This document shows, one piece after another, positions 7,681 to 31,695 of a stretch of 64,000 nt of DNA; position 1 is the first letter of the stretch; the number at the start of each line of letters is the position of its first letter. Location of the stretch: the IMG/VR virus record IMGVR_UViG_3300017917_002466, positions 124,001 to 188,000 of that record. One strand, given 5' to 3'. A program made the translations under genes and the position numbers. The notes under the pieces are model-generated. The model was not told the DNA's origin and searched no databases. It was given only the letters and a program-made list of their open reading frames with translations.

Positions 7681-7697
7681 TTTTCTCCTATACATTT

Positions 7698-9117: not shown

Positions 9118-9197
9118 TTGGCCCTCCTTATTGGTTTGTTGTTTGCAGAGTCCTATTTGGACTTTCAATATCAATATACAATGTTTTCCCGAACTTG

Positions 9198-9515: not shown

Positions 9516-9574
9516 TTTGTTTTCCTTTCTGTACATTCAATATACATCAAGAAGACTGTTTTATCAAGCACATT

Positions 9575-12163: not shown

Positions 12164-12264
12164 TATAAATACTGTTGTAGTAGGGAGACAGAGGAGTCGA
12201 CACCTTTTCTCAACCATACTTGAGATTATCCCTACTTAATCTACTTAACCTGTATGGAGGGAAT
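12164..12264 (+). ncRNA. TATAAATA promoter plus structured pseudoknot leader RNA, copy 1
   Basis: P1 agtaggga/tccctact; P3 tctcaa-ccatac-ttgaga; loop pairs with gtatgg overlapping the SD. Confidence 0.75.
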
Positions 12265-12957
12265 ATGCAAAAACTTTCTAAAGAAGATTTCATTTCCAAG
12301 GCTAATCAAATCCACCAAAATCGTTTTGATTATTCAAAAGTTGAATACTACGATAATAAAACTAAGGTTTGTATTATTTGCAAAGAACATAAAGAGTTCT
12401 ATCAACAACCAAGCAAACATCTTCTTGGTCAAGGTTGTCCAATATGTTCAGACCAAAAATTAACATTAGATAAGTTTATTTCAAAAGCAAATCAAACTCA
12501 TAACTTCTATTACGATTATTCTGAAGTTGTTTATGTTAACTGGAAAACTAAAATTTGTGTGGTATGTCCAGCACACGGAAAGTTCTGGCAAAGACCAGAT
12601 GTTCATTCGTCTGGTCAAGGATGTCCTATATGTAAATCTTCAAAAGGCGAAAAAGAAGTTGAAAAATGTTTAACCAACAAAGGAATTACATTCATTCCAC
12701 AAAAACGATTTGAAGATTGTCGTGGTAAAGTCAAACCTTTACCTTTTGACTTTTACTTACCAGAACATAATATTTGTATTGAATACCAAGGTAAACAACA
12801 CTACCTAAAAGAAAGTAAGTTCTATTCGGAAGAACTTTTACAGAATGATAAAACAAAAGCCCAGTATTGTTTCGATAACAACATTAGGCTTATCGTGATC
12901 CCATATTGGGAAGACGTTTATAAATGTCTACGATTTTTTGGTAGCGAAAGAGGTTGA
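12265..12957 (+). CDS. free-standing endonuclease (two zinc-ribbon repeats plus DUF559/Vsr-like PD-(D/E)xK domain)
   Basis: FISKANQIH...YDYS...C..H...GCPIC repeats; PFDFYLP...IEYQGKQH; GGAGG RBS. Confidence 0.8.
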   Translation: MQKLSKEDFISKANQIHQNRFDYSKVEYYDNKTKVCIICKEHKEFYQQPSKHLLGQGCPICSDQKLTLDKFISKANQTHNFYYDYSEVVYVNWKTKICVVCPAHGKFWQRPDVHSSGQGCPICKSSKGEKEVEKCLTNKGITFIPQKRFEDCRGKVKPLPFDFYLPEHNICIEYQGKQHYLKESKFYSEELLQNDKTKAQYCFDNNIRLIVIPYWEDVYKCLRFFGSERG

Positions 12958-13092
12958 CTTTAAAAAAACATTAAATCCTTTCTGTAAAGAAATGAAAGGG
13001 CTCTGGTCGCTTGGCGTCCGTGGCCCCTTCCCCCAATTTACCAACCCATTGACTTGATACATACAATATATATCAAAAAAAGTTGTTTTGTC

Positions 13093-13190
13093 AAATGGAA
13101 TTTGTTTATGTAAAGATTGTCATAAAAAATTTCACAGTATGTTTGGTATAAAACATACTGTAAAATCTATGATAGACGATTTTTTAAAAA
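13093..13190 (+). pseudogene. HNH endonuclease C-terminal remnant
   Basis: Translates NGICLCKDCHKKFHSMFG, similar to the end of 24660..25343. Confidence 0.7.
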
Positions 13191-13457
13191 CTACCAACCC
13201 ATCGACTTAACCATCTCACGACATTTGATTTGAGCAGGAGTATATTCGAGGTCTTTCTTCCATTCACCAGTCGTCTTGTCTCTATAGGCGATAATATCGC
13301 TGGTATACACACTTCCGCACTCCGTCTCAAAGCCATAGACCCGACAGATGGTCGTGGAACCACGGGCTGAACCAAGAACGTCGGCTTCCCAGCCGTTGCG
13401 CTGCATCACCCGAAAGCCCTTCTTGTTCTTCGCATCCCACAGTTCGGCAGTCTTCAT
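13191..13457 (-). CDS. hypothetical protein
   Basis: ORF MKTAELWD with own promoter. Confidence 0.6.
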   Translation of the reverse strand: MKTAELWDAKNKKGFRVMQRNGWEADVLGSARGSTTICRVYGFETECGSVYTSDIIAYRDKTTGEWKKDLEYTPAQIKCREMVKSMGW

Positions 13458-13540
13458 TCCCCATCCCTTCGTTAAATGTTTGTTTCTCTCACCTACACAT
13501 TTAATATACAACAGAAAAGGGATTTTGTCAAGCCCTATAT

Positions 13541-13909
13541 TCACCACGAAGACTGGTAGATACAAGGCTTGTTTGCGGCGATGGCATTGTCCAGAATCTT
13601 CAAGGTGGACTCCAAGTCCTGAATGTAGTATTCGTCATAGTCCGTTCCACCGAAGAAAAATCCGCCCTGAGTAGGAAGCATTTTTTCCGCCAGAGAGAAG
13701 TCGCTCTTCTTGGCAGCGGCCAAGACCTTGTTGACGGTTGAACGAAGGGACTTCAGCTTGGTGACAGAGACGAGGGACCCCTGGCATTCGTCAATACCCT
13801 TCTGGCAGTTCTGTACGAACCATTTGTGAATTGCGTTGGCCTTGCGCCAATATCCGACATTAACGTTCTGGCCATTCACATTGCGGAACAAATACATATC
13901 CAGACCCAT
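13541..13909 (-). CDS. conserved phage hypothetical protein
   Basis: MGLDMYL, YWRKANAIH.WF, LPTQ.GFFFG and YQSSW family motifs. Confidence 0.75.
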   Translation of the reverse strand: MGLDMYLFRNVNGQNVNVGYWRKANAIHKWFVQNCQKGIDECQGSLVSVTKLKSLRSTVNKVLAAAKKSDFSLAEKMLPTQGGFFFGGTDYDEYYIQDLESTLKILDNAIAANKPCIYQSSW

Positions 13910-14234
13910 ACGCCTCCCTTATGTTGATTGTTTCTTTTCCCTACATATCTAATATACATCAAGGAAATTGTTTTGTCAAGCCTTAATTACGAAAAGAATC
14001 AACTCGCATTAGTTGATCTTTTCAAGAGAAAATGTTTCGCCTTCATAAACATATTTCAACTGAACATCTTCTGCTTCTGCTCTTGTCAAGATTTTGGGGT
14101 TTGCACCCTTTGCACCCTTTGCAACATAAATCGGCATCCCTTGAACAGTTCCCTCAAAGACCCAAACTTTCCCCTCTGCATCTGTTACCTTTGCAATGTA
14201 TAATTCTTTCATATTTGTTTTTCCCCATCCTCTC

Positions 14235-14645
14235 TTAATTTGTTTTTCCATAGTTGTCAAGGAATTTTTGAATTGCAGGAAGAAGAACATTATGAAAAGA
14301 ATCAACGATTATTTTAGCCGATTCATAATCTGGTGCTAAGTCTTCATTAGTCACGACGAATCCTGCATCCATATTGGACTGACCTTGATTAAAAATATTT
14401 ATAAAGACTTCCTTTGCCATTTGAAGAACAATATCGTCATCTTCATTAATGTTTGAATTAACAAGATTGGTTTTGAAAAACATATCTGCTTCCCAATCTT
14501 CTTTGGCGGCATTATATTCTTTTTGAACAAAAGTGTCAAAAGAAATTTTTTCATTGAGGGTTTTTTCAATATCATAATGCATTGAATGAAGTTCTTTCAA
14601 ACCAATATCATCAATCCATTCGATAAGACTGGGGAACTGAATCAT
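14235..14645 (-). CDS. hypothetical acidic protein
   Basis: 136 aa; GGAGG RBS; own promoter. Confidence 0.6.
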   Translation of the reverse strand: MIQFPSLIEWIDDIGLKELHSMHYDIEKTLNEKISFDTFVQKEYNAAKEDWEADMFFKTNLVNSNINEDDDIVLQMAKEVFINIFNQGQSNMDAGFVVTNEDLAPDYESAKIIVDSFHNVLLPAIQKFLDNYGKTN

Positions 14646-14715
14646 ATTTCCTCCCTCGTTAATGTTGTTCTTTCAACACATATAATATACAACAAGAACT
14701 GAAAAAAGTCAATCC

Positions 14716-15066
14716 CTATTTGACATTATCAAATTTTACCATAGCTGCATTTTTGCTATTAAAAGACCAGGCCCAATCACCAAACGATTCATTACCTGGA
14801 AACATTTCCGAAGGTGGATAATTATATACTTGACCTTTCTTTTTACCGTGCTTTTGAATCAATGAATATCCTTTTTGAACCTTAATCAAAAAGACTTCGT
14901 ATCCGACAGTCTTGCCGACCTCTCCATTGATTTCTTTTTCTATCTTTTGTTCGTAGACAGCTGCCTTGTCTGAACGACAGACCTGAACGTATTCGTATCC
15001 GTTCTTGGACTTCGTCTGAGGCAGCTTCTCGTAGGTCTTTGGGGCAGGTGCTTTGGTTCGTGCCAT
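14716..15066 (-). CDS. hypothetical protein
   Basis: GYEVF and E.FP.NE.FG.WAW; own promoter. Confidence 0.65.
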   Translation of the reverse strand: MARTKAPAPKTYEKLPQTKSKNGYEYVQVCRSDKAAVYEQKIEKEINGEVGKTVGYEVFLIKVQKGYSLIQKHGKKKGQVYNYPPSEMFPGNESFGDWAWSFNSKNAAMVKFDNVK

Positions 15067-15178
15067 TGTTCTTTCTCCCTTCCCTAATAATATACATCAC
15101 GGACGAAGGATTGTCAAGCCCTAAAAAAATGAATATGCCGCCAGTTTGGAATCCTTTCAGTTAAAGTTATCTTCTTTC

Positions 15179-15502
15179 CTATATAAAATTGACAATTCTT
15201 GAAATTCGATTTCGATAAACTTCGGTCTCAGTTATCGTTCTCTTTTTGCAATCTACGGTCACAAGGTATTCAATGTCTCCGTGCATATTGGTTCCGATGC
15301 CGTAGCCAGTCTCGCCAGCCTCATCGCCGCGAACCATCTCACAGAAGATGATGCGAGCAAGATATTCAGGATCATCCTGGCGGCCCTTCCCAACAGGACT
15401 GTTGACAGCCTTCACAACCTTATCCATCAGATTGTCGCCATCCCAATGCTGGTACAGATAGACACCTTCATCCTTGATAAACACCTGCGCTCTTGTTCCC
15501 AT
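15179..15502 (-). CDS. conserved phage hypothetical protein
   Basis: MGTRA, YLYQHWDG and HGDIEY motifs. Confidence 0.7.
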   Translation of the reverse strand: MGTRAQVFIKDEGVYLYQHWDGDNLMDKVVKAVNSPVGKGRQDDPEYLARIIFCEMVRGDEAGETGYGIGTNMHGDIEYLVTVDCKKRTITETEVYRNRISRIVNFI

Positions 15503-15552
15503 TGTTTTCCTCTCTTTCTATACAGATAATATACATCAAGGAAATTATTTTG

Positions 15553-15858
15553 TCAAGACCTTTTATTTCCACATTGACCACAGTAATTATCTTTGTCATT
15601 AAAAGCGTTTCCGCAATTACGACAATAATTATCTTTCTTACAATTTTTCACGGGAGTTGTAGCCAATGTACTTATTAATCCTTCATCTCTTGCTTCGTCA
15701 ATATGCCTGCAATTTTTACGATATTCAAATCCTCTACAATCACAAGTAATAACACCATCAACAAACTTAATAGTATAATCATTTCCACTGTATGAATGAC
15801 ATATAATCTCATGACATTCATCATTCATTATCAATTCAAAATCATCTTTAAAACTCAT
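15553..15858 (-). CDS. SWIM zinc finger plus zinc ribbon protein
   Basis: TCDC.GF.YR..CRHI; C-terminal CxxC...CxxC. Confidence 0.7.
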   Translation of the reverse strand: MSFKDDFELIMNDECHEIICHSYSGNDYTIKFVDGVITCDCRGFEYRKNCRHIDEARDEGLISTLATTPVKNCKKDNYCRNCGNAFNDKDNYCGQCGNKRS

Positions 15859-17418
15859 TGGGTAACCTTTCGTTTATATTCCACAATATTCACATGATCC
15901 ATTGATATGAAACAAATGATAATTTCTCTCAGTGATATATCCGTAATCATACATGCCATGTTTAACAGGAACCATAAACTTATTAGGTCGAGTTTTCCAA
16001 GTCTTCACTTTGCCGTTGACTCTCCAACGAACACAAGTACCATCAGCATTCATTTCATCATTCATCGCGAGAACATCATGATAATGAAGATTTTTAGCTT
16101 TATCAATTGTCAATGCAACCATCTTATTCCTCGCCTTCTATTCTGTCAATGTTGATTTCTTGTTCATCATTGTTAGTATCATTTTCGATACCGGCAACTT
16201 CACAAAGAGAATCCCAGACTCCAATTTCGATAGCATAATCTGTTAAATCACTTTTACGAAGTACCATATTGTTTCTCCCTTCAACAATAATATACAACAA
16301 AACATCCGATTTGTCAAGCCCTAAAATCTCTCGACAACCGTAAAGTGATCACCTTTCCCTCTTGCGGCGATCTCAGGCAATTGTTTTTCGCAACCAGCCA
16401 GAGTCCTGAAGCCTGACCAATCCATCTCGTCATAAAGAATAAGGAAGTTTGCGCTCTCAACATTTCCCCTTGGTTCACTTACCTTAATGAACGAACCAAA
16501 ATGTTCCTGACAGTAGATTAATTGGTCCATGATGTTTAGCCTTTCATTAGTTAGTTATCTTACGCCTGTAGTATCCATACGGAACTGACATATCAGGAGT
16601 ATTGACTTTATTACCAAAAAGCTGTTCACCTACACTCTTCCATTTTCTGTAGATCGGTTCATTGCGAACCATCAAAGACACATCATCACCCTTGACAATT
16701 ATCTCCCCAATGTTCAACAGACGATAACCCTCGCCAGGATAAACCACTTCGTAAAAGAAAGCTTTCATAGTTCACATACTCCAATAGGTTTCGGATGAAG
16801 GATCGCAACACAAGGGAGTGTTTACGGGCTGTGTGAATTCTTTGCCACTTATCAAATTCTTTTTTGTCACCTGCTTTTCGATTTTAGTATGAAAGATAGA
16901 TTCGTCTTCGATAGCATAATCGTCTTTATTTGTTAAAACTATTCCCATATCATTAAACTCTCTTTTCATAACACGAGTCATGAATCCCTTTGCAGTTCTT
17001 TTAAATGTAAACCTTTTGGGATTTAATGAACCACCTAATAGTCTTGTAGTCTTTTTATTGTATATGATATACATATTAAATCCTTTCTATGCATTTAATA
17101 TAATACATAAAAGAAGAAAAGTCAAGCCCTATTTTAATCTATTTAATAAATCAATTGCTTGCTGTTGATACTTTTCAACTTTATTAAAATTATCTGTGAT
17201 AAAGAAATAATCGGTTCCGGTGTTTCCTAATACACATGAACTATCCATCCAATATGAATATCCATCCGAGTCTGTATAAGACCAATAAAATCCATCAGAA
17301 GTCTTTATACTTAGGCTAACTCTTTTTGAATATTCCCATTCACTTTTGTCTCTATTCCATTGACGAGTAAATACATTATTCTTTGTAAAGACTAAATCAG
17401 TTATATTGTAATTCATAA

Positions 17419-17622
17419 TCAATCCTCCTTAAAAAACTTTTTTGTTTTATTCCTCGGCAATTCGTTCCAATTTCTTACCGCTATTTTATGATCAAATTCG
17501 TCTGCGTGTTCGTCATTACGACCATTATTTTGTTTGGGACCAGTCATCAAACACACATTACATTCGACATAAACATAACGATCATTCAGATCAGTACTAC
17601 CACAATTAGGACAAGGTTTCAT
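17419..17622 (-). CDS. Lar-like restriction alleviation zinc ribbon protein
   Basis: MKPCPNCGS, VECNVC, A...WN pattern. Confidence 0.55.
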   Translation of the reverse strand: MKPCPNCGSTDLNDRYVYVECNVCLMTGPKQNNGRNDEHADEFDHKIAVRNWNELPRNKTKKFFKED

Positions 17623-17632
17623 TTGATTTCTC

Positions 17633-17811
17633 CTAGCTGTTATGATTATAATAACAATCATCAGAACAACAAGTTTGATTATTAGATTCTGGCTTAAAAT
17701 CACAACCACACCAAAGACAATTACGAACTTCATTCATCCATGCATCAGGACAACCATGTTCATGACAAAGAACACCATTAATAACGAGAGTTTCACATGA
17801 TCGACACATAG
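17633..17811 (-). CDS. Cys-rich protein, paralog of 9575..9796
   Basis: MCRSCETLVINGVLCHEHGCPDAW. Confidence 0.65.
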
Positions 17812-17869
17812 ATTGTTTTATCCTTTCTGTATATCTAATATACATCAGAATGATTATTATGTCAAGCCC

Positions 17870-18590
17870 TATTTTCTTTTATTTGGGGCTTGACAATATT
17901 AAGCCCGTGTTGTATATTATAATCATAGGGTGACGAAAGTCATCAGAAGAGGCCAAGGGCGAGGGTAGCCCGCCCAGCCGGAGACGGGTTTAAGCGCTTA
18001 AACAAAGGCCCTCAAAAATCCTCCCTCACCAAACCCCTATTTAAACGCTTCAAATTCCATCGTAGATAGGAGCCTTTGTTGCCCCTATAAGGCCCCCTGC
18101 TACAGGATCAAACCTAGTGTCTATTTAAGCGGTTTGAATCAATTCCCATTGACACAATGTGGCGAGGCTGTGACACATCAAAATTGGGCTTAAGCGGTTA
18201 GCCTATTTAAACGATTAACAAAAAAAGAAAGGGCTTGACAAACACTCTGCTATGATGTATATTAATAGTACTGGAAGCCTCCAGCGAACGGGGAGATCGC
18301 TCTTTGATTTAACCGCTTAAATGAATGCTTAAGTTTCTTCGCCTTTGTCAATCCTTTTAGTCAATCTTCTCTGTCAATTTATCCCCTCTGAAACAGCTAA
18401 ATATAATCTCTCATTATCCCCTATGAAAACAAGCCCTATTATCCCCTCTGAAATATCCCCCAAAGGCTCATTGACAATTACCTTCTAATATGTTATCTTG
18501 TATTATAGGTGGTGAAAGAGCCTATCCGAGCGTTTGCGGGCTTATGGGGGCTCTAGTACCCACGTATTTAAGCCCTTAAAAAGGAGCCTT
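17870..18590. promoter_or_regulatory. divergent non-coding control region with plus-strand promoters, palindromic sites and direct repeats
   Basis: TTGACA promoters at about 17890, 18235, 18471; TTTAANCGNTTAAA-like sites; three ttatcccct[ca]tgaaa repeats at about 18379-18454. Confidence 0.65.
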
Positions 18591-18595
18591 GACAG

Positions 18596-18865
18596 ATGAT
18601 GAAACTAGTCCATTCCTTCTTGCGATTCATATGGAGTAACCTCATAGGCATTCTCAGTTGGCTATGGTTGATATGGGTGACTGCAAGCCTATTGGATATG
18701 GGAAGCAGGCTTGACAAATTAGAGAAGCAAAATGGGCTTATCTTAGAATGGATATTGATGCAGGGGCAAGATGTTGGAAAGCTTAAACAGGCTCCGAATG
18801 AATCCGATACATCACAAGTCCCATATGGAAATTCGGATAGATGGAAAGGCTTAAATTGGCTTTAA
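18596..18865 (+). CDS. membrane-anchored hypothetical protein
   Basis: N-terminal hydrophobic helix followed by short coiled coil. Confidence 0.55.
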   Translation: MMKLVHSFLRFIWSNLIGILSWLWLIWVTASLLDMGSRLDKLEKQNGLILEWILMQGQDVGKLKQAPNESDTSQVPYGNSDRWKGLNWL

Positions 18866-19032
18866 GCATATGGAAATGTGGATGGATGGAAAGAGTTTGG
18901 GAGGCTTGATTAAGCCCACAACGAGAGAGTGAATAGGCCCTATCTTTATTAAAGTGGGAGATTGTGGGATAAAGTGGGCCTTCGTGGGGAAATCTGGATA
19001 GAAAATCAATAGCTTACGCGGGAGCCTTCCTT

Positions 19033-22000
19033 ATGGAAAGATGGAGAATTAGACCTGATGATTGTCATTTTGATTCTGTTTGCCCCTTTTATGATTCAAA
19101 GAAAAATAGATGTACTAATATCAAAATGGCCTTTAGAAAGAAGTGTATTGTTTGGGAAGCCCTTCCTGTATCAAACTTTGATATATTGATAGACCTTGGA
19201 GTTAATCGTGATGATGAATGGTCAAGGGAAGAAGTTTTACAATGGAGAGAGTTTGGAAATCTGGATGGATTTTCTGGGAGTTAAGCCTATTATGGAAAGA
19301 TGGATTATCAGTAAAACATATTCGGAATACATTAAAGATGTTATGGACATTGTGGTTCGTATGAATAAGTATAAAGATGTTGCGACTAATTTATTTGGCA
19401 ACTGTCTTAATGGGCCTTTTTTGTTAGATAGGGTTGAGAATGGTTTGTTTAAGTCTAATGCTATGGTTTCTGTTGACAAGGTAAAAGATAATGAAAAGTT
19501 TAACTTTGTAATGTATGTTGAGTCTGGAAATCTGGATGGATAATCTATATGAGAAGATTTTATACTTTAAAGAAACACTGGGACAAGGATTGTTTAAAAG
19601 CCTTTGAGTCTCGTATGACGGATATATTAGAATACATTGATTACTATAAAAGAAGTAATATATGGTTAGATTCTGATATTAAAAGCATTGAGAATTGTAG
19701 AGAAGATGTTACTATAATTTACAATGGATTAAGAACGAAAGGAACTATATAAGAAGGTGGGAAGGTAACAAAGTATGATAGAAGATTGAACGGAAACCTT
19801 TATGAAGCAGAATTTCGGATGGATGTTTTGGTATGGAAGTCTTCATTTGGGCAAATGGGGAGTACTGATACTGATTTTGAATTCTTCTTTAACTACTTGG
19901 AGAATATGAATGATAAGATGGCATATTAAAAAGATCAAAGCCAAGTGGTGGAAGATAACCTTCCCTTGGTTAGATAAGATAACTAAGATAAGAGTTGACA
20001 GAAGGTTAGATGTAATGGTAGCTATTAATTTCTTGAAAGGTTGTCGTCACGAAGGTGGTATTCCTTGCGTTGAAAGAATGTATGTTGAAGGTAAAGGATA
20101 CACAAGCCTCTATGAAAGAAAGAACTATCTTGATTGTTTGGAGAATGGAGTTTGACTTATGCAAAGATGGAAGATTGATAGAGTATTTTTCTCTGAGGAA
20201 GAAGCCGAAGGTATGCTTGGTGAATGGCTTGATGTTCGTCTTCACTTAGACTATTTGGAAAATGATTGGCACGGCCAGAAGCTTCTTGAAACGCTTGAGG
20301 AAGATCAAGTATGATAAAATATAAAGGGTTTAAAAACGACCACGATAAAGCAAGAAAAGAAGTCCTTGAAAAAATGAAGGATATGATTGAACTAAGGGAA
20401 TGGTGTGTTAGACATAATTCTCTTTCTTGTGACTTAGATGATTTTAATAATTTCCTTGAGATAATTGAAAAAGGTGGCAATGATAATGTATAAGTGGAGA
20501 ATTCTTAAATTCAAGACAAGAAAGGATGCTGAGTTTATACTTGAACAAAGGTTAGATGTTTTGAAGTATGTTCCGACAGTAATTAACAAGGAACCATATT
20601 TTGAAATGCTTGAGTATGATGAAGAGCTAATAGAAGAAGAGACATTTAACAAAGACAGGTCTTTACTGTAGATACATAATAAGGTGAAGCTAATATGAAA
20701 AGATGGAAGACAAGAGACAAGAAGCCAGAAACAGTAGAACTCTATATGGACATATTAAAGGCTGAAGAGTTCTTCAAATTCTTGGATAATGAAAGTATAT
20801 TTGACAAAAAGCAAAGATACCCTGATAACTTTCAAAGATACATTATCAAGTCCGAGTTCGGTAACAATGAAGGTAAATATGTATAGATGGAAAGTTCAAA
20901 GGCTAAGTAGGAACAAAGAGATGCTTGAAAGGCGAATGGATGCCTTAGTAGCAAAAGAATATATTCTACATAACAAGTTTGAAGAAAGTATTATTGCTTG
21001 GAGTGGTGGCCCTCATCTCATTAAAAAGTTTGAACATTATTTGACGTTTCTTGAGAGTGGAATAATGGAGAAATAAAGTTAGCTAAATGTATGTAACCCA
21101 TTGGAGGACTTATGATAAGATGGGTTTCAAAAAAGGTCAAAACAGTTCCAGCAACAGACTGGATTACAATGGAGAAAACTGAGCAAGAATTATTGGATGA
21201 ATTGGCGTATCAGATGGATATTCAAATAGTTAAGCAGCTAATGTCAAAAGAAGGTGGGTGTTTTGTCAGGGTGTTTTGATGACTGATATAGAAGAATACC
21301 TTGAATGTTTGGAGAATTCAGTATGAGAAGGTGGAGTTTCAAAAAGAACGGGAACAATGAAGAGTTTGATTCTTTTAGACTTATGACTGATATTTTAGTT
21401 TATTTGAATAATATGAAAGAGATAACAGCCAAATCTGTTAGTAATCCAGAAACCCTGAAATTCTATATCCAACATCAAACGGATAAAATAATTGCTTCAA
21501 TTGAAGAAGGAGATGGCTCAAATGGTTAGATGGCATATTGTCAAAGGAAGAAAAGAAGAACCCGAACTTACCAAGAGATTCACCGATGTTCAGTATGAAA
21601 TTGATTGTTGGAAGTCTCTTAAACTAACCGCGGGATGGGCTGACGAAAAAGGAATTCAAGAAGCAGTTAAAAATACTTTACATAGTCTTGAGTTTGGAAG
21701 GTAGACAAATGGTAAAATGGAGATTCCATAAACTTTGTTTAGATGCTGATGAGTTGCACGAAGAATGTCTTGACATAATAACACGACGAAGAAATTTGTT
21801 TAGAAGATATGAGGATGAAGAAATGGATTGTTTAATACAAGAAGATTGGAAGTCCGAACTAAGGTCAATAGAATATGATTAAGTGGAGCGCAAACGGTTC
21901 AAATGGTCAAAGAAGAAAGAGGATAATAGCCACATTATCTGATTTAAAGATATGTGAAGCTTGCATTAATGAATATGATACTTTTCAAAATTACTTAGAA

Positions 22001-22723
22001 ATTCTTGAAGATGGTCAAGACGATGGGAAGTTTCCTGCTCAAATTCAAAATAAAATTATTGTAGGTATTGAAAAATTAAATTGGACTGATTTTAACTTTT
22101 CTATGTAAAGATTTTATATGATACGTTGGAAAATCTATAAATCGAAAAACAAGAGTTCTATAAGAGCCAGAAACAATATGATGAACTTTTATAATTGGAG
22201 TAACGCTATTAAACAAGTCGGGAAAAAAATTAATGCAGATTATTCTAAACATATTAGCGAAAGATTAACATTAATTGAGTCAGAAGAAGTTTATATAATT
22301 AAAAGGAATATTTAAGCTTGCATAACTTATTGGAAAATATTATATTATGATAAGGAAATGGAGGGTTAATAAAGGAAAGTCAGTTCAGGCTAGCTTTACT
22401 ATTTCTAAGCTAGGCCATCAAGGATTTATTTCACCAAACCCAAAAGACTTTGAAAAGTACTGTGACATAATGAGTGATGAATTAAAGTTCAGAAAACTAT
22501 TTACTGATCCAAATACTATTAAAAGATACGAAGAATTTTTGGAGAATGACTGATGCAAAGGTGGATAGTTCCAAAACAGATTCGTAAGTGGGAAGCTGTC
22601 ATTGAGGAAAGGGATCGTTGTATGGATGTTTTGAAAGATATTGAATATTACTCAGGAATTTGTTTGGTTAGAGTAGACCCTTTAAAAGTTAGAATGGCTG
22701 AACTATCTGTATGGGAAAACTAA
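19033..22723 (+). other. tandem run of about 17 small ORFs, about 15 starting M-x-[RK]-W or a close variant
   Basis: MERWRI, MERWII, MIRWHI, MQRWKI, MYKWRI, MKRWKT, MYRWKV, MIRWVS, MRRWSF, MVRWHI, MVKWRF, MIKWSA, MIRWKI, MIRKWRV, MQRWIV. Confidence 0.8.
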
Positions 22724-22995
22724 TTGTATTTAATTATGTAAAGTTATGATAAAATTTATGTACGAACAAGTTTCTATGTTTACTTTTTGGTTTGAAATTC
22801 GTGGAAATTATGGTGAATTACTTTATCCAAAATCGACAATATCTGCACCTGCAATGTCTATAATAAAAGAAATTTTGACAGACTATTTGTTTGCCAGAGA
22901 AATTAATAATAATACTTCTAAGATATTTAATAATGAAAGTTTAAGCCCTGAAGAACAAATAGATTTATTAACAATAATAATTCACAAACTAGAGG

Positions 22996-23604
22996 ATGCT
23001 GACAATGACAAATAATGATAAAACTTTTATTGGTTGGGCGATAAATGAATGTATTAAAGAAGGTGTTAGTGTTCATTTAGTTCCTAAACAATCTATTAAA
23101 TTTGATAACGAAGATTGTGCTGGTTGTTTTAGTGATGGAGACAGAGAACTTTATGTAGCCACTAAAACTTCATTTAAAAATTTCTTTCCAACGTTTCTTC
23201 ACGAATTTTGTCACTTTAAACAATGGCAAACAAAAGAACCATCATATATGAAAGTCTGCAATAATCCTGAAGTTGATGCTGATATGTGGGAATGGATCGA
23301 GGGAAAAGATATTCCGATGAAAAGAGTTAGAAAGTCAATTCACTCTTATAGATTAATGGAGTTGAACTGTGAGAAGATGGCCTTAAATTATATAAAGAAT
23401 TTTGATTTATCTATTAACAAAGAGCATTATATTGTAGCCGCAAATGTCTATGTGTTGTTCTATGGGGTGATTGAGGAAACAAGAAAGTGGTTCAAGTACT
23501 CTCCTTATGATGATAGACTCTTTGATTTGGTACCAAAGAATTTTGTAAGGAGTTTCAGACTTCCGAAGGGGTTTAAAAAGAGGGCGTTGTCAGTGTGTTA
23601 TTGA
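22996..23604 (+). CDS. putative zincin-like metalloprotein
   Basis: FLHEFCH HExxH motif with downstream E. Confidence 0.6.
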   Translation: MLTMTNNDKTFIGWAINECIKEGVSVHLVPKQSIKFDNEDCAGCFSDGDRELYVATKTSFKNFFPTFLHEFCHFKQWQTKEPSYMKVCNNPEVDADMWEWIEGKDIPMKRVRKSIHSYRLMELNCEKMALNYIKNFDLSINKEHYIVAANVYVLFYGVIEETRKWFKYSPYDDRLFDLVPKNFVRSFRLPKGFKKRALSVCY

Positions 23605-26516: not shown

Positions 26517-26738
26517 CTACGAATGCGTGCGACAAGGATATTTTACGTGAACGCACTGACGGTCGTAATTCTCCACACAGCACGTTGTTTGGCATGGCTT
26601 GCTTTGCCTGTTGTTTGTCTGTTGAGCGAGTACAGCGGATTTCAGAGTTTGCCAATGCAACCGCCCCTTAGTTTGCAAGTGCTCCGATAACTCATCAAAC
26701 CATTGAACCGCATCAGATATTTCGTTACTCATTGGCAA
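26517..26738 (-). CDS. cassette ORF with attC-encoded Cys-rich tail
   Basis: One ORF per cassette; AGGAG RBS. Confidence 0.55.
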   Translation of the reverse strand: MPMSNEISDAVQWFDELSEHLQTKGRLHWQTLKSAVLAQQTNNRQSKPCQTTCCVENYDRQCVHVKYPCRTHS

Positions 26739-26780
26739 ACTCCTATCAGTAAATTTAAGAGCGAAATTGCAAACAACGTA

Positions 26781-27095
26781 TCACGCACCCGCCCGTTGTT
26801 TGTCCGTTATCCACTTACAGCACCGAGGGCACCAAGCATCTATACCGCTATATGGATACACTGGTGCCTTACCACATGTAGGACAAATTACGGGCTGCGT
26901 GTGTTGTGGGACCGTGGGCAATTCTACCGCAATCTCTGCGCGGCGATCTTTTACCCATTGCTCCATTTCGATTTGATCATTACTCAATACCACCAACGCA
27001 TCATTAGGGATTTTCCCACCATGACGAAAAGGTGCCGTGACCTTGTTGACTCGGCAAAGGAACATCTCAAGCCTGTGTATGTCTTCGACGCGCAT
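26781..27095 (-). CDS. cassette ORF with attC-encoded zinc ribbon
   Basis: CPTCGK...CPRC lies inside attC 26771-26909. Confidence 0.6.
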   Translation of the reverse strand: MRVEDIHRLEMFLCRVNKVTAPFRHGGKIPNDALVVLSNDQIEMEQWVKDRRAEIAVELPTVPQHTQPVICPTCGKAPVYPYSGIDAWCPRCCKWITDKQRAGA

Positions 27096-27721
27096 AATAA
27101 TTCCTTTTGAATTGCCCATGTACCACAACGTTTAGCGCACGGGTGATAGTTTGCCCGTGGCTCGACAAAGCCCACACTTTACCATACCAGTACCAGGATC
27201 GTCGGATAAATACTCGCCACTACCCATACACGTAGGGCAAATTTTACCCTGCGCTTGTTGGTTGATGCGGAGGGAAGCCACCTCAGCCTCCAGCGTGGCG
27301 ATAGCCCGTTCAAGAGACAAAAACCGATTCATAACAAATGATGGATCAGAGAAATCAATTTCGTTTACCACGCCACACCTCCATGTATAAAAAGCTGACC
27401 GAAGTTTCAACCAACGTCTGCCCTATGCTGACGTTTCTGTTTCAGAAATGTGGGAGTCATCGACCGAACAGCATTGGGCTGTTGTTTGCTGTGCGCTCGC
27501 TTCCACAAAACCTGCGGTTTGCGGAGTATCGAGAGGGCACCAATTTGGTATTTCAAAAGTAACATTGATAACAGACCTACCGCCATATAGAGGATGGTTG
27601 CAAATAAATCCACTCTGACTGTAGCACAAGGGACATTCGTTACAGCAACTAATTTTGATTACACGCATGAGCAAACCGCCTATCTATTCTCAAAAGAGCG
27701 CATTGCAACCAACGGTATCGG

Positions 27722-27958
27722 CTACGCCTGAAGTTTGCCCGTACCGTGACAACGCCAACAGTCCTTACCATTGTTATAATTATTGGTAGAACCAGACCCA
27801 GCAGGGAAACAGTCAGGGCAAATTTTAGGCTGGCCGTGTTGGTGGATGTGACGCTTGCTTCCACCAATTTTGCGGCGGGTCTTAAACTGATCCTCGCCAT
27901 AGTGGCCGGTTATGTAATTATCAAGTTCCTGACTCATGCGCTTATCGTTGCCGAACAT
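27722..27958 (-). CDS. cassette ORF with DnaJ-like Cys-rich tail
   Basis: ICPDC..GSG...CWRCHGTGK; GGAGG RBS. Confidence 0.6.
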   Translation of the reverse strand: MFGNDKRMSQELDNYITGHYGEDQFKTRRKIGGSKRHIHQHGQPKICPDCFPAGSGSTNNYNNGKDCWRCHGTGKLQA

Positions 27959-28590
27959 ATTTCCTCCCGCCGCTTACCAGTTAAAAGCAAGCGGCATTTA
28001 CACCAAGTTTGGCGCATTCGCACGAAGTTACGCCGTCTTATCGCACCAACAAGTAGAACACTGCTTGTGAGCAACATCAAACGGGCATATATCCAAGCCC
28101 CATTTACAAGAAGGCGTAATTTTGTGCTGCGCCTGTTGGTGGATGTGCCGCGTTTCTTCCGCAATGTCAGGCTGGCAATCTTCCAGCATGATAGGGCAAG
28201 AACCGGCGTGATCCACTATTTCATCTTGAGTGCCAAAGAAGCCGCAATATTTACATTTGCCAGCCATATAATAAACCTTTCTTGAAACGCGGCATTTACA
28301 CCAACGTTTGCTCAACCGCACGATAGTTGTCGCAATCGATCTACCACTGCTGTAACATAAGACACATAAACCTTGTGCTCAACAAACTCTTTGTAAAGAC
28401 TATCGGCTATTGCGGCAATTTCGTGCTTGAGCTGTTGTACGTCTGTGGAAGGAGCGGCTTCCTCAGCTTTAAGTGCTCGCATCACGGCAGGGCAACGGTC
28501 TACGTTTATACCCATACCGCTACACGGCAAAATGAATGACTTGTTATCCACGCGAGCACCTCCTAAATCGTAAAGAGCGACTGGAATTGC

Positions 28591-28722
28591 GTACAACGGT
28601 TCAGCAACGTGCGCCGTGCCTACAGGGCTTCACGGCAATATGGACACCACACAAACCCAGTATGGGCCTTGCCAAGACGAAGCCACTCGTGAAATTGGCA
28701 TGGCGTACTTGCCGTGTTGTGC
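28591..28722 (-). repeat. attC-like site, near-identical to 29438-29570
   Basis: About 105 bp internal identity with 2 visible substitutions; encodes NTASTPCQ[FY]HEWLRLGK.HTGFVWCPYCREAL. Confidence 0.85.
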
Positions 28723-28844
28723 GATGAATTTGTTGACTCCCTAATGTAAGCGCGAATTGCTTCTAACGCGGTAAAATCTTTTGAATATTTACACATTCTC
28801 TCTACTTGCAAAACGGCTTCGTGTATATCCATTCGCGCCTCCAA
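28620..28844 (-). CDS. cassette ORF (body family shared with 31415..31663)
   Basis: ALE.IRA...ESTNSSHN shared; tail shared with 29468 cassette. Confidence 0.65.
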   Translation of the reverse strand: MEARMDIHEAVLQVERMCKYSKDFTALEAIRAYIRESTNSSHNTASTPCQFHEWLRLGKAHTGFVWCPYCREAL

Positions 28845-28895
28845 TATGGTTCAACAAACTTTTGCACAACGGTTCGGCAAACGGGCGAAGTTGGT

Positions 28896-29063
28896 TTACC
28901 TCGACACGGAGGGCTGTTCTACGCCAATTTCGCCCTTTGCCTGTTGTGCGATGTTGTTTTTAATTACCTTAATTTCAGCGGCGATTTCTCGTAACCGAAG
29001 ATTATTAGCTACAACAAAGCACCACAACGATAAATAAGCCAGAAAGACAAAAAACCATTTCAT
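28896..29063 (-). CDS. cassette-borne 55 aa membrane protein
   Basis: MKWFFVFLAYLSLWCFVV... Confidence 0.55.
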   Translation of the reverse strand: MKWFFVFLAYLSLWCFVVANNLRLREIAAEIKVIKNNIAQQAKGEIGVEQPSVSR

Positions 29064-29109
29064 AATCGCCGCCTATAAATCAAAGATTAAAAACCATTTC
29101 GCCTAACGT

Positions 29110-29406
29110 CTACCGCATCGCACGAAGTTGCCGCGCCCAAACCCACAACCTACGATAAACCCCTGACGGTAGATTATTGTTATTGTCTACAAAGGCTTCC
29201 ATTTCTGCGGCAATTTTGTGCTGCGGTTGTTGCACGGGGCGCTTCGCCCGAACCGTTCGGCCCGTTTCCAAATTATCCAGCGCGGTGCGGACTGCTATTG
29301 CCCCGCTGTGGCCGAGAGAATAATTGACAACGGCAACCGCTTTGCCGTTACGACATACCTCAAACGCATAGCCAGTATCTTCTATCTCATATTTGGCACC
29401 GCGCAT
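29110..29406 (-). CDS. cassette ORF
   Basis: AGGA RBS; tail ..WARQLRA shared with 30599 cassette. Confidence 0.6.
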   Translation of the reverse strand: MRGAKYEIEDTGYAFEVCRNGKAVAVVNYSLGHSGAIAVRTALDNLETGRTVRAKRPVQQPQHKIAAEMEAFVDNNNNLPSGVYRRLWVWARQLRAMR

Positions 29407-29437
29407 ATTAACATCCTATCTTTAAGGGCCGAATGGC

Positions 29438-29570
29438 GTGCAACGTTCTCGGCAATGTACGCCGTGCCTACAGGGCTTCACGGCAATATGGACACCACAC
29501 AAACCCAGTATGGTCCTTGCCAAGACGAAGCCACTCGTGATATTGGCATGGCGTACTTGCCGTGTTAGGC
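29438..29570 (-). repeat. attC-like site, near-identical to 28591-28722
   Basis: GCCTAAC...GTTGCAC. Confidence 0.85.
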
Positions 29571-29701
29571 GATGTAGAAAGCGACTCCTTAACGTCCTCA
29601 AATTTGACAAATTCACCGTCGTCGCACTCCTCCATCCGAGCATGCGTGCCATACATATCGCTCGTGACCTTATAATCGTACCGTGTCAAATTTACATCCA
29701 T
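29468..29701 (-). CDS. cassette ORF (NLTRY...G..VKF.D.KE body family)
   Basis: Body related to 32217..32474 and 31696..31962. Confidence 0.6.
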   Translation of the reverse strand: MDVNLTRYDYKVTSDMYGTHARMEECDDGEFVKFEDVKESLSTSPNTASTPCQYHEWLRLGKDHTGFVWCPYCREAL

Positions 29702-30598
29702 ATATCGCTCTCGCTTTCTATTTCGCATAACGTCTGCCACACGGTTGATCGTTACGGCCTACCTTGCCAATCACCAGATTCACGTTCAGGAACATCATAT
29801 CGCCGTTTAGATAAATCTCCATAATATGAATAGGCCGTAATGTCAACCTGTGGCTGTTGTACGTCTGTGGAAGGAGCGGATTCTTTAGTTAATGCGGTGC
29901 AGCCATGACCGACACCCTGAACACCTTGCCACTCCCACCGAGCTTGTATATAGTGACGACAATCTTTGAACATTTGCACCGCCTTATAGATCGTTTAGAG
30001 CGACTGGAATAGCGTACAACGTGTGCCAAAGTATGAAGGTGTGAAACAATTTGCGAAGCGAACATACTTTGGCTGTTGTGTGTTGGTTTTCGCTCCACAA
30101 TATTAAAAAGCAATTTGGCGATTGTAACGAGGCCAACTCAACCACCCTCGTATCCCATCGGGCGTCCCCTTTGGTGGTCTACATAGCCGTGGACGGCTTA
30201 GCCAAATTGCCTATAAATTCAAAGAGCGAAAACTTACACACAACGTATACGCTATTGTGAAGTAACTATGTTATTTAGGCGCTCCTCTAACTGTGAAATA
30301 AGCGACAATGCCTGTGGATACGACTCCATTGCTGACGGAACTGAATCCCGTAGAAACTTGAGCGCCGCCACAATAGCGTTGTTGTGCGAAGGTTTTAACG
30401 CCTCCTCACAAAACATTTTTATGCGACCCCACGCCAGTTGTTCAGACGAAGACCCTTTTGCATTAACAAGTGCGCTAACAGATGATAGTTCATTTTCAAG
30501 CATAAAAACTCCTAAATAAAAAGCGTTAAAACTTTTGCACAACGGGATCAGGCATTGCCCGACAGTTTGCGCGGTGCTTCACAAGCGATACAAACGCT

Positions 30599-30895
30599 TC
30601 ACAAAGCGCGAAGTTGCCGCGCCCATTTACTTAACTGCTCTGCACTTGGTACGCCACCGATATTTGCTATGCGCACACCATCCTCAAGCTCAGTGGCAAT
30701 TTGGGCGATAGCCGCGCTTTGTGTGTTGGTTGATGTGGAAGGAATGCCCACCTTATTTTTCTTTCGGCGGGTAATCTTTCTCCACCACGAATGAACAACG
30801 GAACAGATAATAGCAACCAATCCTATTGCCAACGCTACGCCAAGGAACACCAGCCCAAACACATCATGAAACGTCCATACGAAAATAGAACCCAT
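30599..30895 (-). CDS. cassette ORF, membrane protein
   Basis: AGGAG RBS; long hydrophobic segment. Confidence 0.6.
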   Translation of the reverse strand: MGSIFVWTFHDVFGLVFLGVALAIGLVAIICSVVHSWWRKITRRKKNKVGIPSTSTNTQSAAIAQIATELEDGVRIANIGGVPSAEQLSKWARQLRAL

Positions 30896-30954
30896 TTTTT
30901 TCTCCTTACCCGCCGAACTATTAATTCAAAAGCGGGATTTATTTTGCACAACGG

Positions 30955-31663: not shown

Positions 31664-31695
31664 TATGGTTCAGCAAATTTTTCGCACAACGTATG

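What the first reader, a model, noticed from the sequence alone, without database searches (positions are those of the whole stretch)
19033..22723. Tandem family of about 17 small proteins sharing an N-terminal M-x-[RK]-W motif
Seen: consecutive 50-85 aa ORFs, often translationally coupled, with otherwise divergent sequences. About 15 start M-x-[RK]-W or a close variant; many have a central D[IV] and end ...[LIV]E.G. Inference: a rapidly diversified paralog array with a shared targeting or docking peptide (by analogy to the T4 internal-protein capsid targeting sequence), or a panel of inhibitors of host defence proteins.
Basis: partly seen in the sequence, partly recalled or inferred. Interest (0 to 1): 0.65.

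Follow-up and report, generated by a model that had tools for sequence, protein, structure and literature searches.

The report
Array of small early phage proteins
A 254-kb uncultured pond phage related to T4 carries about 19 tandem genes for a previously undescribed family of 50-85-residue proteins. The shared N-terminal M-x-R/K-W motif is real and protein-level. It looks like part of a small helical fold made early in infection rather than a T4-style capsid-targeting tag, and the same domain is elsewhere fused to pieces of the major capsid protein.

Summary
Eighteen consecutive + strand ORFs (19033-22723), plus a probable 19th (22746-23015), form one family. Fifteen M-x-[RK]-W tetrapeptides lie on this strand against 0.12 expected (P about 1e-26). 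Across 81 members from four phage lineages, M1, W4, D22 and E57 are 94-100% conserved. R/K3 uses five different codons and orthologs have dN/dS of 0.09-0.46, so the motif is selected at protein level.

The C-terminal LE.G codons also supply the next gene's ribosome-binding site. The family has no Pfam, PHROG or structural relative. AlphaFold2 (pLDDT 85) gives an extended N-terminal segment on a helical hairpin.

Arrays of 8 to about 30 copies occur only in close relatives and sit behind consensus sigma70-type promoters. They gain and lose whole genes between otherwise identical genomes.

There is no T4-type cleavable targeting peptide: L/I-x-E occurs in the first 15 residues of 1 of 88 members. 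Homology to the capsid propeptide is not detectable. However, the only fusion partners found are conserved capsid-protein segments, as in a 118-residue protein elsewhere in this genome.

Best reading, at moderate confidence: an early-expressed panel of small binder proteins for host take-over or counter-defence, with an unexplained link to the capsid protein.

The parts
17890..17918 (+). Consensus sigma70-type promoter (TTGACA-17-TATATT) pointing at the array. Its -35 hexamer lies inside a GC stem-loop (17886-17906).
   Evidence: The strict motif occurs 55 times in the genome against 2.1 in shuffles.
18235..18263 (+). Second consensus sigma70-type promoter pointing at the array. A weaker third one lies at 18471-18499.
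   Evidence: Equivalent promoters stand upstream of the arrays of relatives.
18596..18865 (+). 89-aa ORF with a hydrophobic N-terminus. Its 3' end and the following 170 nt (18822-19011) hold remnants of array junction motifs (YGN.D / RWK).
   Evidence: repeat families D1, D11.
19033..19284 (+). Member 1, 83 aa, starts MERW, ends ..EFGNLDGFSGS.
19292..19543 (+). Member 2, 83 aa, starts MERW. Its ortholog in contig L004 is 67% identical.
19549..19752 (+). Member 3, 67 aa, variant start MRRF.
19786..19929 (+). Member 4, 47 aa from a TTG start. It keeps the RMDVL and YLEN blocks but has lost the N-terminal motif. An ATG at 19775 is out of frame, so this is probably a decayed copy.
19910..20155 (+). 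Member 5, 81 aa, starts MIRW. Its ortholog in L004 is 67% identical, with dN/dS 0.09.
20159..20314 (+). Member 6, 51 aa, starts MQRW.
20311..20493 (+). Member 7, 60 aa, variant start MIKY. Its start overlaps the previous stop (ATGA).
20486..20671 (+). Member 8, 61 aa, starts MYKW.
20695..20886 (+). Member 9, 63 aa, starts MKRW. Its ortholog in L004 is 33% identical.
20879..21076 (+). Member 10, 65 aa, starts MYRW. This was the first AlphaFold2 target.
21112..21279 (+). Member 11, 55 aa, starts MIRW. The expected C-terminal block (..EEYLECLENSV) lies in the +1 frame at 21280-21325, so the gene is frameshifted relative to its intact 78-aa ortholog P0041.
   Evidence: repeat D4.
21323..21529 (+). 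Member 12, 68 aa, starts MRRW.
21522..21704 (+). Member 13, 60 aa, starts MVRW. This was the second AlphaFold2 target (pLDDT 85).
21709..21882 (+). Member 14, 57 aa, starts MVKW.
21875..22108 (+). Member 15, 77 aa, starts MIKW, with a 30-aa tail after the LE.G block. An ortholog is present in L008/L009.
22118..22315 (+). Member 16, 65 aa, starts MIRW (R encoded by CGT).
22347..22553 (+). Member 17, 68 aa, variant start MIRKW.
22553..22723 (+). Member 18, 56 aa, starts MQRW.
22746..23015 (+). 89-aa ORF starting MIKF, with LTDYL and KLED blocks. It is a probable divergent 19th member. It is conserved at 39-55% identity at the distal end of the arrays of relatives, and its G001 ortholog starts MLRW and hits the family HMM at E 5e-4.
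22996..23604 (+). 202-aa SprT/IrrE-like HExxH metallopeptidase. It is a conserved neighbour of the array (35-45% identity in L005, L006, L008 and G001, in varying orientation). A functional link is not shown.

Best explanation
The stretch is a lineage-specific multigene family (18-19 copies here) of small cytoplasmic proteins built on one mini-fold. The fold is an extended N-terminal segment (M-phi-R/K-W-x-phi-x-K) on a two-to-three-helix hairpin. The helices carry a near-invariant Asp (..R-M-D-[IV]-L..) and Glu (..[YF]-L-x-x-[LIV]-E-[YF]-G).

Shown:
- The genes are real and under purifying selection.
- They are translationally coupled.
- They stand behind consensus host-type (sigma70-like) promoters in this phage and in three relatives.
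- Arrays grow, shrink and form chimeras by recombination between copies.
- The family is confined to one clade of freshwater T4-like jumbo phages.
- The same domain is fused to conserved segments of the major capsid protein in separate conserved genes.

Inferred:
- The array is one early operon.
- The N-terminal motif is an integral part of the fold or of a conserved binding face: the aromatic residue goes into the helical groove and R/K3 and K8 pair with D22 and E57. It is not a detachable, cleavable address tag.
- The variable linker and inter-helix loop give each copy its own specificity. The array would therefore be a panel of small binders used early in infection for host take-over or counter-defence.
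- The capsid-fragment fusions use the same domain as a carrier to display capsid-protein epitopes early in infection.
For: Family is real and protein-level:
- HMM and alignments.
- R/K3 is encoded by AGA, AGG, CGT, AAA and AAG.
- Orthologs have dN/dS of 0.09-0.46.
- W4, D22 and E57 are conserved at 94-99% across 81 members from four lineages.

Fold:
- AlphaFold2 with 81 sequences gives pLDDT 85, with residues 1-12 non-helical yet confident (block mean 84) and helices at 13-37 and 42-58.

Early context:
- The strict sigma70-type motif occurs 55 times in the genome against 2.1 in shuffles.
- 29 of these lie on the - strand of the adjacent 20 kb, and two on the + strand lie directly upstream of the array.
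- The same motif occurs on the coding strand upstream of, or inside, the arrays in L005, L006, L007, L008 and G001.

Coupling:
- Overlaps of -1 to -8 nt occur, and Shine-Dalgarno sites lie inside the preceding gene's last codons.

Turnover:
- L004 has 10 genes where this phage has 2 between shared orthologs.
- A 667-bp indel between otherwise 99-100% identical L008 and L009 creates a chimeric gene.

Restricted range:
- There are 41 hits at E<=1e-3 in 1.84 billion representative proteins. Forty are 50-89 aa; the other is a spurious 1318-aa repeat protein.
- The family is present in G001 (capsid protein 86% identical) and was not found in records whose capsid proteins are only 60-62% identical, one of them at least 90% complete.

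Capsid-fragment fusions:
- A genome-wide HMM hit lies at genome position 68642.
- hhalign of the fusion N-domain against the family gives Prob 96%, E 2e-9.
- Conserved homologs are 43-80% identical.
- A second fusion type occurs in L052.
- The fragment keeps the capsid amino-acid sequence (pN 0.20) while synonymous sites are saturated (pS 0.71).
Against: - No partner, target or phenotype is known.
- No transcript or proteome data exist. The only run that holds this DNA is a pond DNA metagenome.
- Early timing rests on promoter consensus alone.
- The packing of the N-terminal segment is read from confidence values only, because coordinates could not be inspected.
- The fold is too simple to give any informative structural neighbour (best Z 5.0).
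- The conserved N-terminal peptide could still be a docking motif for a common partner.
- The capsid-fragment fusions point to capsid biology, which an anti-defence reading explains only by adding a decoy hypothesis.
Confidence: 0.45

Rival explanations
1. Capsid-targeted proteins. The N-terminal motif would direct the proteins into the prohead core, as the T4 internal-protein targeting sequence does. The gp21-like prohead protease would trim them at the conserved Glu, so they would be packaged peptides or core components.
For: - The phage has a T4-type capsid protein and a T4-type prohead protease.
- T4 internal proteins are diverse apart from a conserved N-terminal targeting sequence, and gp21 cleaves after Glu (PMC3012670, PMC9026906).
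- A near-invariant Glu lies near the C-terminus.
- The domain is found fused to capsid-protein fragments at the position where the capsid propeptide would be.
Against: - L/I-x-E occurs within the first 15 residues in only 1 of 88 members.
- At the conserved Glu, the P3 position is variable and the hydrophobic residue is at P2, so the site does not fit L/I-x-E.
- Cleavage there would release only about 6 residues (median).
- The array lies 115 kb from the head genes, behind host-type promoters.
- Profile-profile comparison with the capsid propeptide is not significant (Prob below 1%).
- The proteins are not basic (median pI 6.0).
Confidence: 0.15
2. Modulators of the phage's own capsid protein. 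By Rosetta-stone logic, the fusions mean the free domain works with the major capsid protein or with whatever handles it (chaperonin, elongation factor). Possible roles are timing folding or assembly, or excluding the capsids of co-infecting relatives.
For: - The only fusion partners found for the domain among 65-206-aa proteins are two different conserved capsid-protein segments, equivalent to T4 gp23 residues 90-133 and 262-308.
- These fusions are conserved and under purifying selection.
- In one 38-kb contig, the fusion gene lies about 2 kb downstream of the array on the same strand.
Against: - The closest complete relative, G001, has an array but no fusion gene.
- The array members themselves show no similarity to any other protein of the phage.
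- An early operon of about 19 diverged copies is hard to explain for a single conserved partner.
Confidence: 0.15
3. Ribbon-helix-helix-like dimeric DNA binders or antitoxin-like regulators. The alternating hydrophobic/basic N-terminal segment would pair with that of a second subunit to form a DNA-reading beta ribbon, followed by two helices.
For: - The N-terminal pattern is phi-basic-aromatic-x-phi-x-basic.
- An extended segment followed by helices is predicted in a 50-65-aa protein.
- A Phd/YefM antitoxin cluster is among the loose structural neighbours of the Atlas model (TM 0.62/0.44).
Against: - No RHH, Arc/MetJ/CopG or antitoxin family hit appears in Pfam even at E up to 1.
- The linker between the N-terminal segment and the first conserved helix varies by more than 20 residues, which is unlike RHH proteins.
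- The TM values are at chance level for so short a protein.
- No toxin partner genes are present.
- Dimerisation was not tested.
Confidence: 0.1
4. Nucleotide-level artefact. The shared start would reflect a favoured translation-initiation or recombination context (ATG-NNN-AGA-TGG-A), and the shared end would reflect the next gene's ribosome-binding site, with no shared protein function.
For: - The C-terminal E.G codons (GAG NNN GGA) do form the GGAG/GGA Shine-Dalgarno sequence of the next gene.
- Junction sequences recur as DNA repeats and as decayed remnants upstream of the array.
- Unequal recombination between copies is seen.
Against: - Position 3 uses five codons from two amino acids.
- Position 4 is always aromatic (W, Y or F).
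- D22 inside the protein is 95% conserved.
- E57 is 99% conserved even where no gene follows closely or where the next residues differ.
- Motifs persist between lineages whose synonymous sites are saturated.
- AlphaFold2 confidence rises with alignment depth, from pLDDT 69 to 85.
Confidence: 0.02
5. Precursor peptides of a ribosomally made natural product, with conserved leader-like ends and a variable core, processed by the neighbouring HExxH peptidase.
For: - There are many tandem small genes with conserved ends and variable middles.
- A metallopeptidase gene is a conserved neighbour.
Against: - The proteins are predicted to fold (pLDDT 85).
- No modifying enzymes (cyclase, dehydratase, radical SAM) or exporter lie next to the array.
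- The peptidase is of the SprT/IrrE type common in phages, and its orientation relative to the array varies.
Confidence: 0.03

Closest known systems
T4 internal proteins IPI, IPII and IPIII with their capsid targeting sequence (PMC3012670, PMC9026906)
   Same: Both are sets of otherwise unrelated small phage proteins that share a conserved extreme N-terminal peptide, in a T4-type phage that has a gp21-type prohead protease. At least one T4 example (IPI) is an anti-restriction protein.
   Different: - The T4 sequence is a roughly 10-residue propeptide that ends in an L/I-x-E cleavage site. Here no such site follows the motif (1 of 88).
- The rest of the protein here is also homologous (D22 and E57 blocks), so this is a whole-domain family, not a shared tag on unrelated cargo.
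- The copy number is about 19 rather than 3.
- The context is an early promoter region, not head genes.
Small early ORFs of the hyperplastic regions of T4-type phages, shuffled through promoter/stem-loop cassettes (Arbiol et al. 2010, cited from memory and not checked here)
   Same: Both involve a dense field of consensus early promoters with small, lineage-specific ORFs of unknown function and fast gene-content turnover. One promoter upstream of the array overlaps a GC stem-loop (17886-17906).
   Different: Inside this array the genes are not separated by promoters. They are translationally coupled, and they are paralogs of each other. Turnover is by recombination between the copies themselves.
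Paralogous inner-body / ejection protein families of phiKZ-like giant phages (PMC9026906)
   Same: Both are multi-copy paralog families in very large phage genomes, processed (in phiKZ) after Glu by a gp21-like protease.
   Different: The phiKZ-type proteins are tens of kDa, are encoded with structural genes, and are shown to be in the virion. Here the proteins are 6-10 kDa with no evidence of being structural.
Gol region of T4 gp23, which activates the Lit protease (mentioned in PMC9712102 and PMC12926258; the residue range of about 93-122 is from memory)
   Same: The capsid segment fused to the MxRW domain in the 118-aa protein aligns to T4 gp23 residues 90-133. That is the same, most conserved, stretch of the capsid protein.
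   Different: Gol is part of the full capsid protein and acts as an immune trigger. Here the segment is a separate small gene fused to another domain, and its function is unknown. This concerns the fusion genes, not the array members.
DSAD1, a phage protein that competes with the tail tube protein for the DSR2 sensor (PMC11087589)
   Same: It is a precedent for a small phage protein that blocks an immune sensor at the site where a structural protein would bind. This is the logic of the decoy reading of the capsid-fragment fusions.
   Different: There is no sequence or fold relation, and DSAD1 is not a fragment of the structural protein. This is purely an analogy of mechanism.

Membership tests
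T4-type capsid targeting sequence (CTS) proteins | An N-terminal propeptide of about 10 residues that ends in an L/I-x-E site cleaved by the prohead protease | tested here: not met
   [LI]-x-E occurs within the first 15 residues in 1 of 88 members and within the first 25 in 15 of 88. The definition is taken from PMC9026906.
T4-type capsid targeting sequence (CTS) proteins | Sequence relation to known internal-protein families | tested here: not met
   No Pfam or PHROG family matches at E up to 1 beyond single chance-level hits.
T4-type capsid targeting sequence (CTS) proteins | Presence in proheads or virions, and proteolytic processing | not testable with these tools
   The phage is uncultured and comes from a pond metagenome. 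No proteome is available.
Propeptide (N-terminal region) of the T4-type major capsid protein | Detectable homology to the first 70 residues of this clade's capsid proteins | tested here: not met
   hhalign of 88 members against 16 capsid N-termini gives Prob 0.2% in local mode and 0.1% in global mode. The fusion N-domains against the capsid N-termini give Prob 0.3%. A shared [YF]GN[LM].G[YF] motif is at chance level: 6 genome-wide matches against about 1 expected by my rough estimate from residue frequencies.
Pfam Gp23 (PF07068); applies to the fusion proteins only | Score above the curated cut-off | tested here: met
   Genome 68840-68986 scores 46.5 bits against a cut-off of 24.4, covering profile positions 7-54 only. 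It aligns to T4 gp23 residues 90-133. None of the 18 aligned members has any Gp23 hit, and the genome-wide Gp23 search finds no match in the array.
Ribbon-helix-helix DNA-binding proteins | Match to an RHH family profile | tested here: not met
   No RHH-type family appears among the Pfam hits of the 18 members at E up to 1.
Ribbon-helix-helix DNA-binding proteins | An N-terminal strand directly followed by two helices, forming an intertwined dimer | tested here: inconclusive
   The monomer model has an extended N-terminus plus helices, but the linker length varies by more than 20 residues. Dimer formation was not tested.
Early promoter / stem-loop cassettes of T4-type hyperplastic regions | Each small ORF flanked by its own early promoter | tested here: not met
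   No strict-consensus promoter lies between 18264 and 23604 on the + strand. The genes overlap or are 3-43 nt apart. The flanking - strand region does show one promoter per 0.7 kb.

The most novel reading that the evidence does not exclude
The MxRW domain is a small carrier or binding module of a counter-defence system that works by molecular mimicry of the phage's own capsid protein. Early in infection the phage would make domain fusions that display the two most conserved capsid-protein segments, one of them the Gol-equivalent stretch. These would occupy, without activating, host sensors or host factors that recognise the capsid protein. The roughly 19 free-standing paralogs would be diversified versions aimed at other sensors. 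This would be the first family of phage-encoded structural-protein decoys.
Probability: 0.1. Interest if true: 0.85.

Novelty: new variant of a known kind. Interest (0 to 1): 0.55.

Why it matters
- Large phages carry many small early genes of unknown function, and families with enough copies to define a fold and conserved residues are rare. This one offers about 100 natural sequence variants of a single 60-residue scaffold, so it is a ready-made system for asking how phages diversify small binders.
- The arrays change gene content between otherwise identical genomes, which marks them as being under strong and shifting selection of the kind seen for host-interaction genes.
- Small, conserved, apparently early genes that fuse this domain to the most conserved pieces of the major capsid protein are unusual. 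I found no report of phage-encoded capsid-fragment genes in two literature searches. Several bacterial immune systems sense capsid proteins, so these fusions are a concrete lead for counter-defence by mimicry, or for control of capsid-protein handling.

Tried and rejected
1. Alternative genetic code for the ORF-poor parts of the window: stop-codon counts per frame show no reassignment. Table 11 was used throughout.
2. tRNA and Rfam scans of the window found nothing.
3. blastn of the array against cultured phages found no match.
4. Pfam and PHROGs on all 18 members gave only single chance-level hits.
With the neighbouring 202-aa protein it found no relative.
6. Homology of the family to the capsid propeptide looked attractive by eye: a KW near the start, a helix like ..LLENQE.., and YGSLGGF against YGSLDGY. 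It was rejected by hhalign and by motif counting.
7. Mimicry of other phage proteins by the variable regions of array members: a blastp-short search against all ORFs of at least 100 aa found nothing beyond chance.
8. Fold searches with two models (Foldseek PDB twice, VIA-align against 48,161 chains, ESM Atlas) gave only generic helical hairpins, with best Z 5.0.
9. Co-folding of one member with the major capsid protein returned 'no answer' (score 0.00 in both runs; the controls were not folded). This is neither support nor evidence against binding.
10. The T4-type late promoter word TATAAATA is absent from the + strand near the array. However, the word is only mildly enriched genome-wide (46 and 38 per strand, against roughly 28 expected by my rough estimate from base composition), so I give this little weight.
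11. One hit of the big profile search, P0022 (1318 aa), is a low-complexity eukaryote-like repeat protein and was discarded.
13. Read laying was not used, because only DNA runs from the probable source sample hold the stretch.


Full report
**Where the window lies.** The window is bases 124,001-188,000 of a 253,664-bp IMG/VR virus record with terminal repeats, rated 100% complete. The only sequencing run that holds this DNA is a pond metagenome. The phage has a T4-type major capsid protein (Pfam Gp23, 288 bits) and a T4-type prohead protease. The capsid protein is only about 34% identical to those of cultured cyanophages. This is therefore a deep-branching, uncultured T4-like jumbo phage. Window genes include NAPRTase, an AAA plus VWA pair, an SPFH protein, an ATP-grasp protein, a DNA methylase and an HNH endonuclease.

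**The observation.** Between 19033 and 22723 the + strand carries 18 consecutive ORFs of 47-83 aa.
- Fourteen start with exact M-x-[RK]-W, three with close variants (MRRF, MIKY, MIRKW), and one (19786) has lost its start.
- Fifteen such tetrapeptides lie on this strand of the 3.7-kb stretch. The expectation from the rest of the window is 0.12 (P about 9e-27), and shuffled windows give a mean of 3.2 in total against 19 observed.
- Neighbouring genes overlap by 1-8 nt or are 3-43 nt apart.
- The alignment shows three shared blocks: the N-terminal peptide, a helix with ..R-M-D-[IV]-L.., and a C-terminal ..[YF]-L-x-x-[LIV]-E-[YF]-G.
- An HMM of the 18 recovers 17 of them at E of 4e-9 or better and the frameshifted member (21112) at 5e-5.
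- The 89-aa ORF at 22746-23015 is a probable 19th member, because its ortholog in a relative starts MLRW and hits the HMM.

**Protein level or DNA level.**
- Position 3 is encoded by AGA, AGG, CGT, AAA and AAG.
- Position 4 is W in 94% of members and Y or F in the rest. D22 is 95% conserved and E57 is 99% conserved across 81 members from four lineages.
- Orthologous pairs between this phage and contig L004 have dN/dS of 0.09, 0.40 and 0.46, with synonymous sites near saturation in two pairs.

The N-terminal motif is therefore selected as protein. The C-terminal LE.G is both: the Glu is conserved regardless of what follows, and its codons (GAG NNN GGA) also provide the GGAG/GGA ribosome-binding site of the next gene.

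**Relatives.**
- Pfam and PHROGs give nothing.
- A profile search of 1.84 billion representative proteins gives 41 hits at E<=1e-3. Forty are 50-89 aa, and the other is a spurious 1318-aa repeat protein.
- Their contigs carry arrays. L004 has 14 copies in 3.2 kb. L005, L006 and L007 have 7-8 copies that reach the family profile, within longer runs of small + strand genes. L008 and L009 have more than 20 copies. A 38-kb contig has about 30 consecutive small genes; one of them is a confirmed member and no DNA could be read for the others.
- A complete 264-kb relative, G001 (capsid protein 86% identical), has at least 14 copies starting MWKW or MIRW.
- The four other records searched showed none. 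Three have capsid proteins only 60-62% identical, and one of those is at least 90% complete. The fourth (capsid protein 82% identical) is only 53% complete.
- The wider consensus of the C-terminus is ..L-E-[YF]-G-[SN]-[LM]-D-G-[YF].

**Evolution of the arrays.**
- Paralogs are 15-30% identical, while orthologs are 33-67% identical. The duplications are therefore old.
- Gene content nevertheless changes fast. Between two shared orthologs, L004 has ten genes where this phage has two.
- L009 and L008 are 99-100% identical on both sides of a 667-bp insertion or deletion covering 3-4 genes. The event joins the head of one gene to the tail of another.
- In the window, member 21112 is frameshifted relative to its intact ortholog. 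Member 19786 has lost its start. Decayed junction motifs lie upstream of the first member.

**Structure.** AlphaFold2 gave pLDDT 69 with 32 sequences. With 81 sequences it gave pLDDT 85: residues 1-12 are non-helical but confident (block mean 84), with helices at 13-37 (kinked at 22) and 42-58. No search found more than a generic helical hairpin. The N-terminal 12 residues carry a mean charge of +2.7 and the last 20 a mean of -2.4. Median pI is 6.0. From these numbers I infer, without having seen coordinates, that the N-terminal segment packs on the hairpin. In that picture the aromatic residue is buried and the basic residues face D22 and E57.

**Expression context.**
- The strict motif TTGACA-N16-18-TAYAWT occurs 55 times in the genome against 2.1 in composition-preserving shuffles.
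- Twenty-nine copies lie on the - strand in the 20 kb just upstream of the array, in front of small - strand ORFs. The only two + strand copies in this part of the genome lie at window 17890 and 18235 and point into the array.
- The same motif stands on the coding strand upstream of, or inside, the arrays in L005, L006, L007, L008 and G001.
- It is established knowledge that T4-type phages use host sigma70 polymerase for early genes. I therefore infer that the array is an early operon. This is an inference from sequence, not a measurement.

**The capsid-protein link.**
- The family HMM has one hit outside the array, at genome position 68642 (E 1.7e-6). This is a 118-aa ORF.
- Its first 55 residues or so are a family member (hhalign Prob 96%, E 2e-9).
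- Its residues 63-106 align to T4 gp23 residues 90-133 and are about 82% identical, by hand count over 39 residues of the alignment, to this phage's own capsid protein.
- It is not debris. Homologs of 90-133 aa that are 43-80% identical occur in other contigs. The N-domain has dN/dS of about 0.2. The capsid-like segment differs from the real capsid gene at 71% of synonymous sites but only 20% of non-synonymous sites.
- In contig L052 a second fusion precedes it, joining the domain to the capsid segment equivalent to gp23 262-308.
- A search tuned for 65-206-aa proteins found no other fusion partner.
- G001 has the array but no fusion.
- From memory, gp23 residues of about 93-122 are the Gol peptide that triggers the Lit protease. 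That Gol is a short peptide within gp23 is stated in PMC9712102.

**What it is not.**
- It is not a T4-type capsid targeting sequence. That sequence is a roughly 10-residue propeptide ending in L/I-x-E (PMC9026906). Here 1 of 88 members has such a site in the first 15 residues. At the conserved Glu the hydrophobic residue is at P2, not P3, and a median of 6 residues would be released.
- It is not detectably related to the capsid propeptide.
- It is not an RHH family member by profile.
- A co-fold of one member with the capsid protein gave no answer either way.

**Verdict.** This is a new, clade-restricted family of small proteins in large, fast-changing, probably early-expressed arrays.
Its alternative, a panel of host-directed inhibitors, fits the context best but is untested. 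I hold it at 0.45.
- Capsid targeting (0.15), capsid-protein handling (0.15) and RHH-like regulators (0.10) remain open.
- The capsid-fragment fusions are the most unusual result and the best experimental handle.

Noticed in passing
G000 genome 68642-68998 (outside the window; L003:1303-1659); relatives P0048-P0054, P0057, P0059; L052:355-678 and 656-1012: These are conserved 100-130-aa genes that fuse the MxRW domain to conserved segments of the major capsid protein (equivalent to T4 gp23 90-133 or 262-308). They lie next to replication genes: a 197-aa ORF, then RNase H. Other small genes (P0055, P0056) carry the same capsid segment without the domain.
   Followed up: partly
window 26600-33500, - strand (also about 5700): This is a second set of small (70-100 aa) - strand ORFs in a stretch of 46-48% GC, against about 36% elsewhere. 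Several share a (S/P)-S-H-N-(S/T/N)-A motif followed by Cys-rich ends. The word KPTHNSQSMFASQI recurs twice in another frame. It is possibly another paralog family or a repeated DNA element.
   Followed up: partly
window about 1-17865, - strand (genome 121,336-141,865): There are 29 perfect-consensus sigma70-type promoters in 20 kb, about one per small ORF. At 17886-17906 a GC stem-loop overlaps the -35 hexamer of a + strand promoter. This resembles the promoter/stem-loop cassettes described for T4-type hyperplastic regions (from memory).
   Followed up: partly
window 17920-18600: This is a roughly 700-bp stretch without a convincing ORF between the divergent promoters. It is GC-rich in places, with repeated near-palindromes of the type TTTAAGCGCTTAAAC (at least six copies by eye) and three direct repeats of TTATCCCCTCTGAAA (18379-18453). 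It has no Rfam match. It could hold small RNAs or regulator binding sites.
   Followed up: no
window 21112-21325: Array member 11 is frameshifted. Its C-terminal block is readable in the +1 frame and ends in an ATGA overlap with the next gene. The ortholog P0041 is intact. The cause could be a mutation, an assembly error at a G/T-rich run, or programmed slippage.
   Followed up: partly
G000 genome 69598-70542 (L003): A GIY-YIG homing-endonuclease-like ORF lies between the 197-aa ORF and RNase H. It is absent from the same position in relative L052, so it is an insertion polymorphism.
   Followed up: no
window 22996-23604: A 202-aa HExxH protein is SprT/IrrE-like by Atlas structure (TM 0.9 to phage clusters). 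It is conserved beside the arrays of four relatives, but in either orientation.
   Followed up: partly
window 43936-46648 and 56323-57489, - strand: An AAA_5 ATPase plus a DUF2201/VWA protein pair (CobS/CobT-like or MoxR-like), and a nicotinate phosphoribosyltransferase. These are auxiliary metabolic genes typical of large phages.
   Followed up: no
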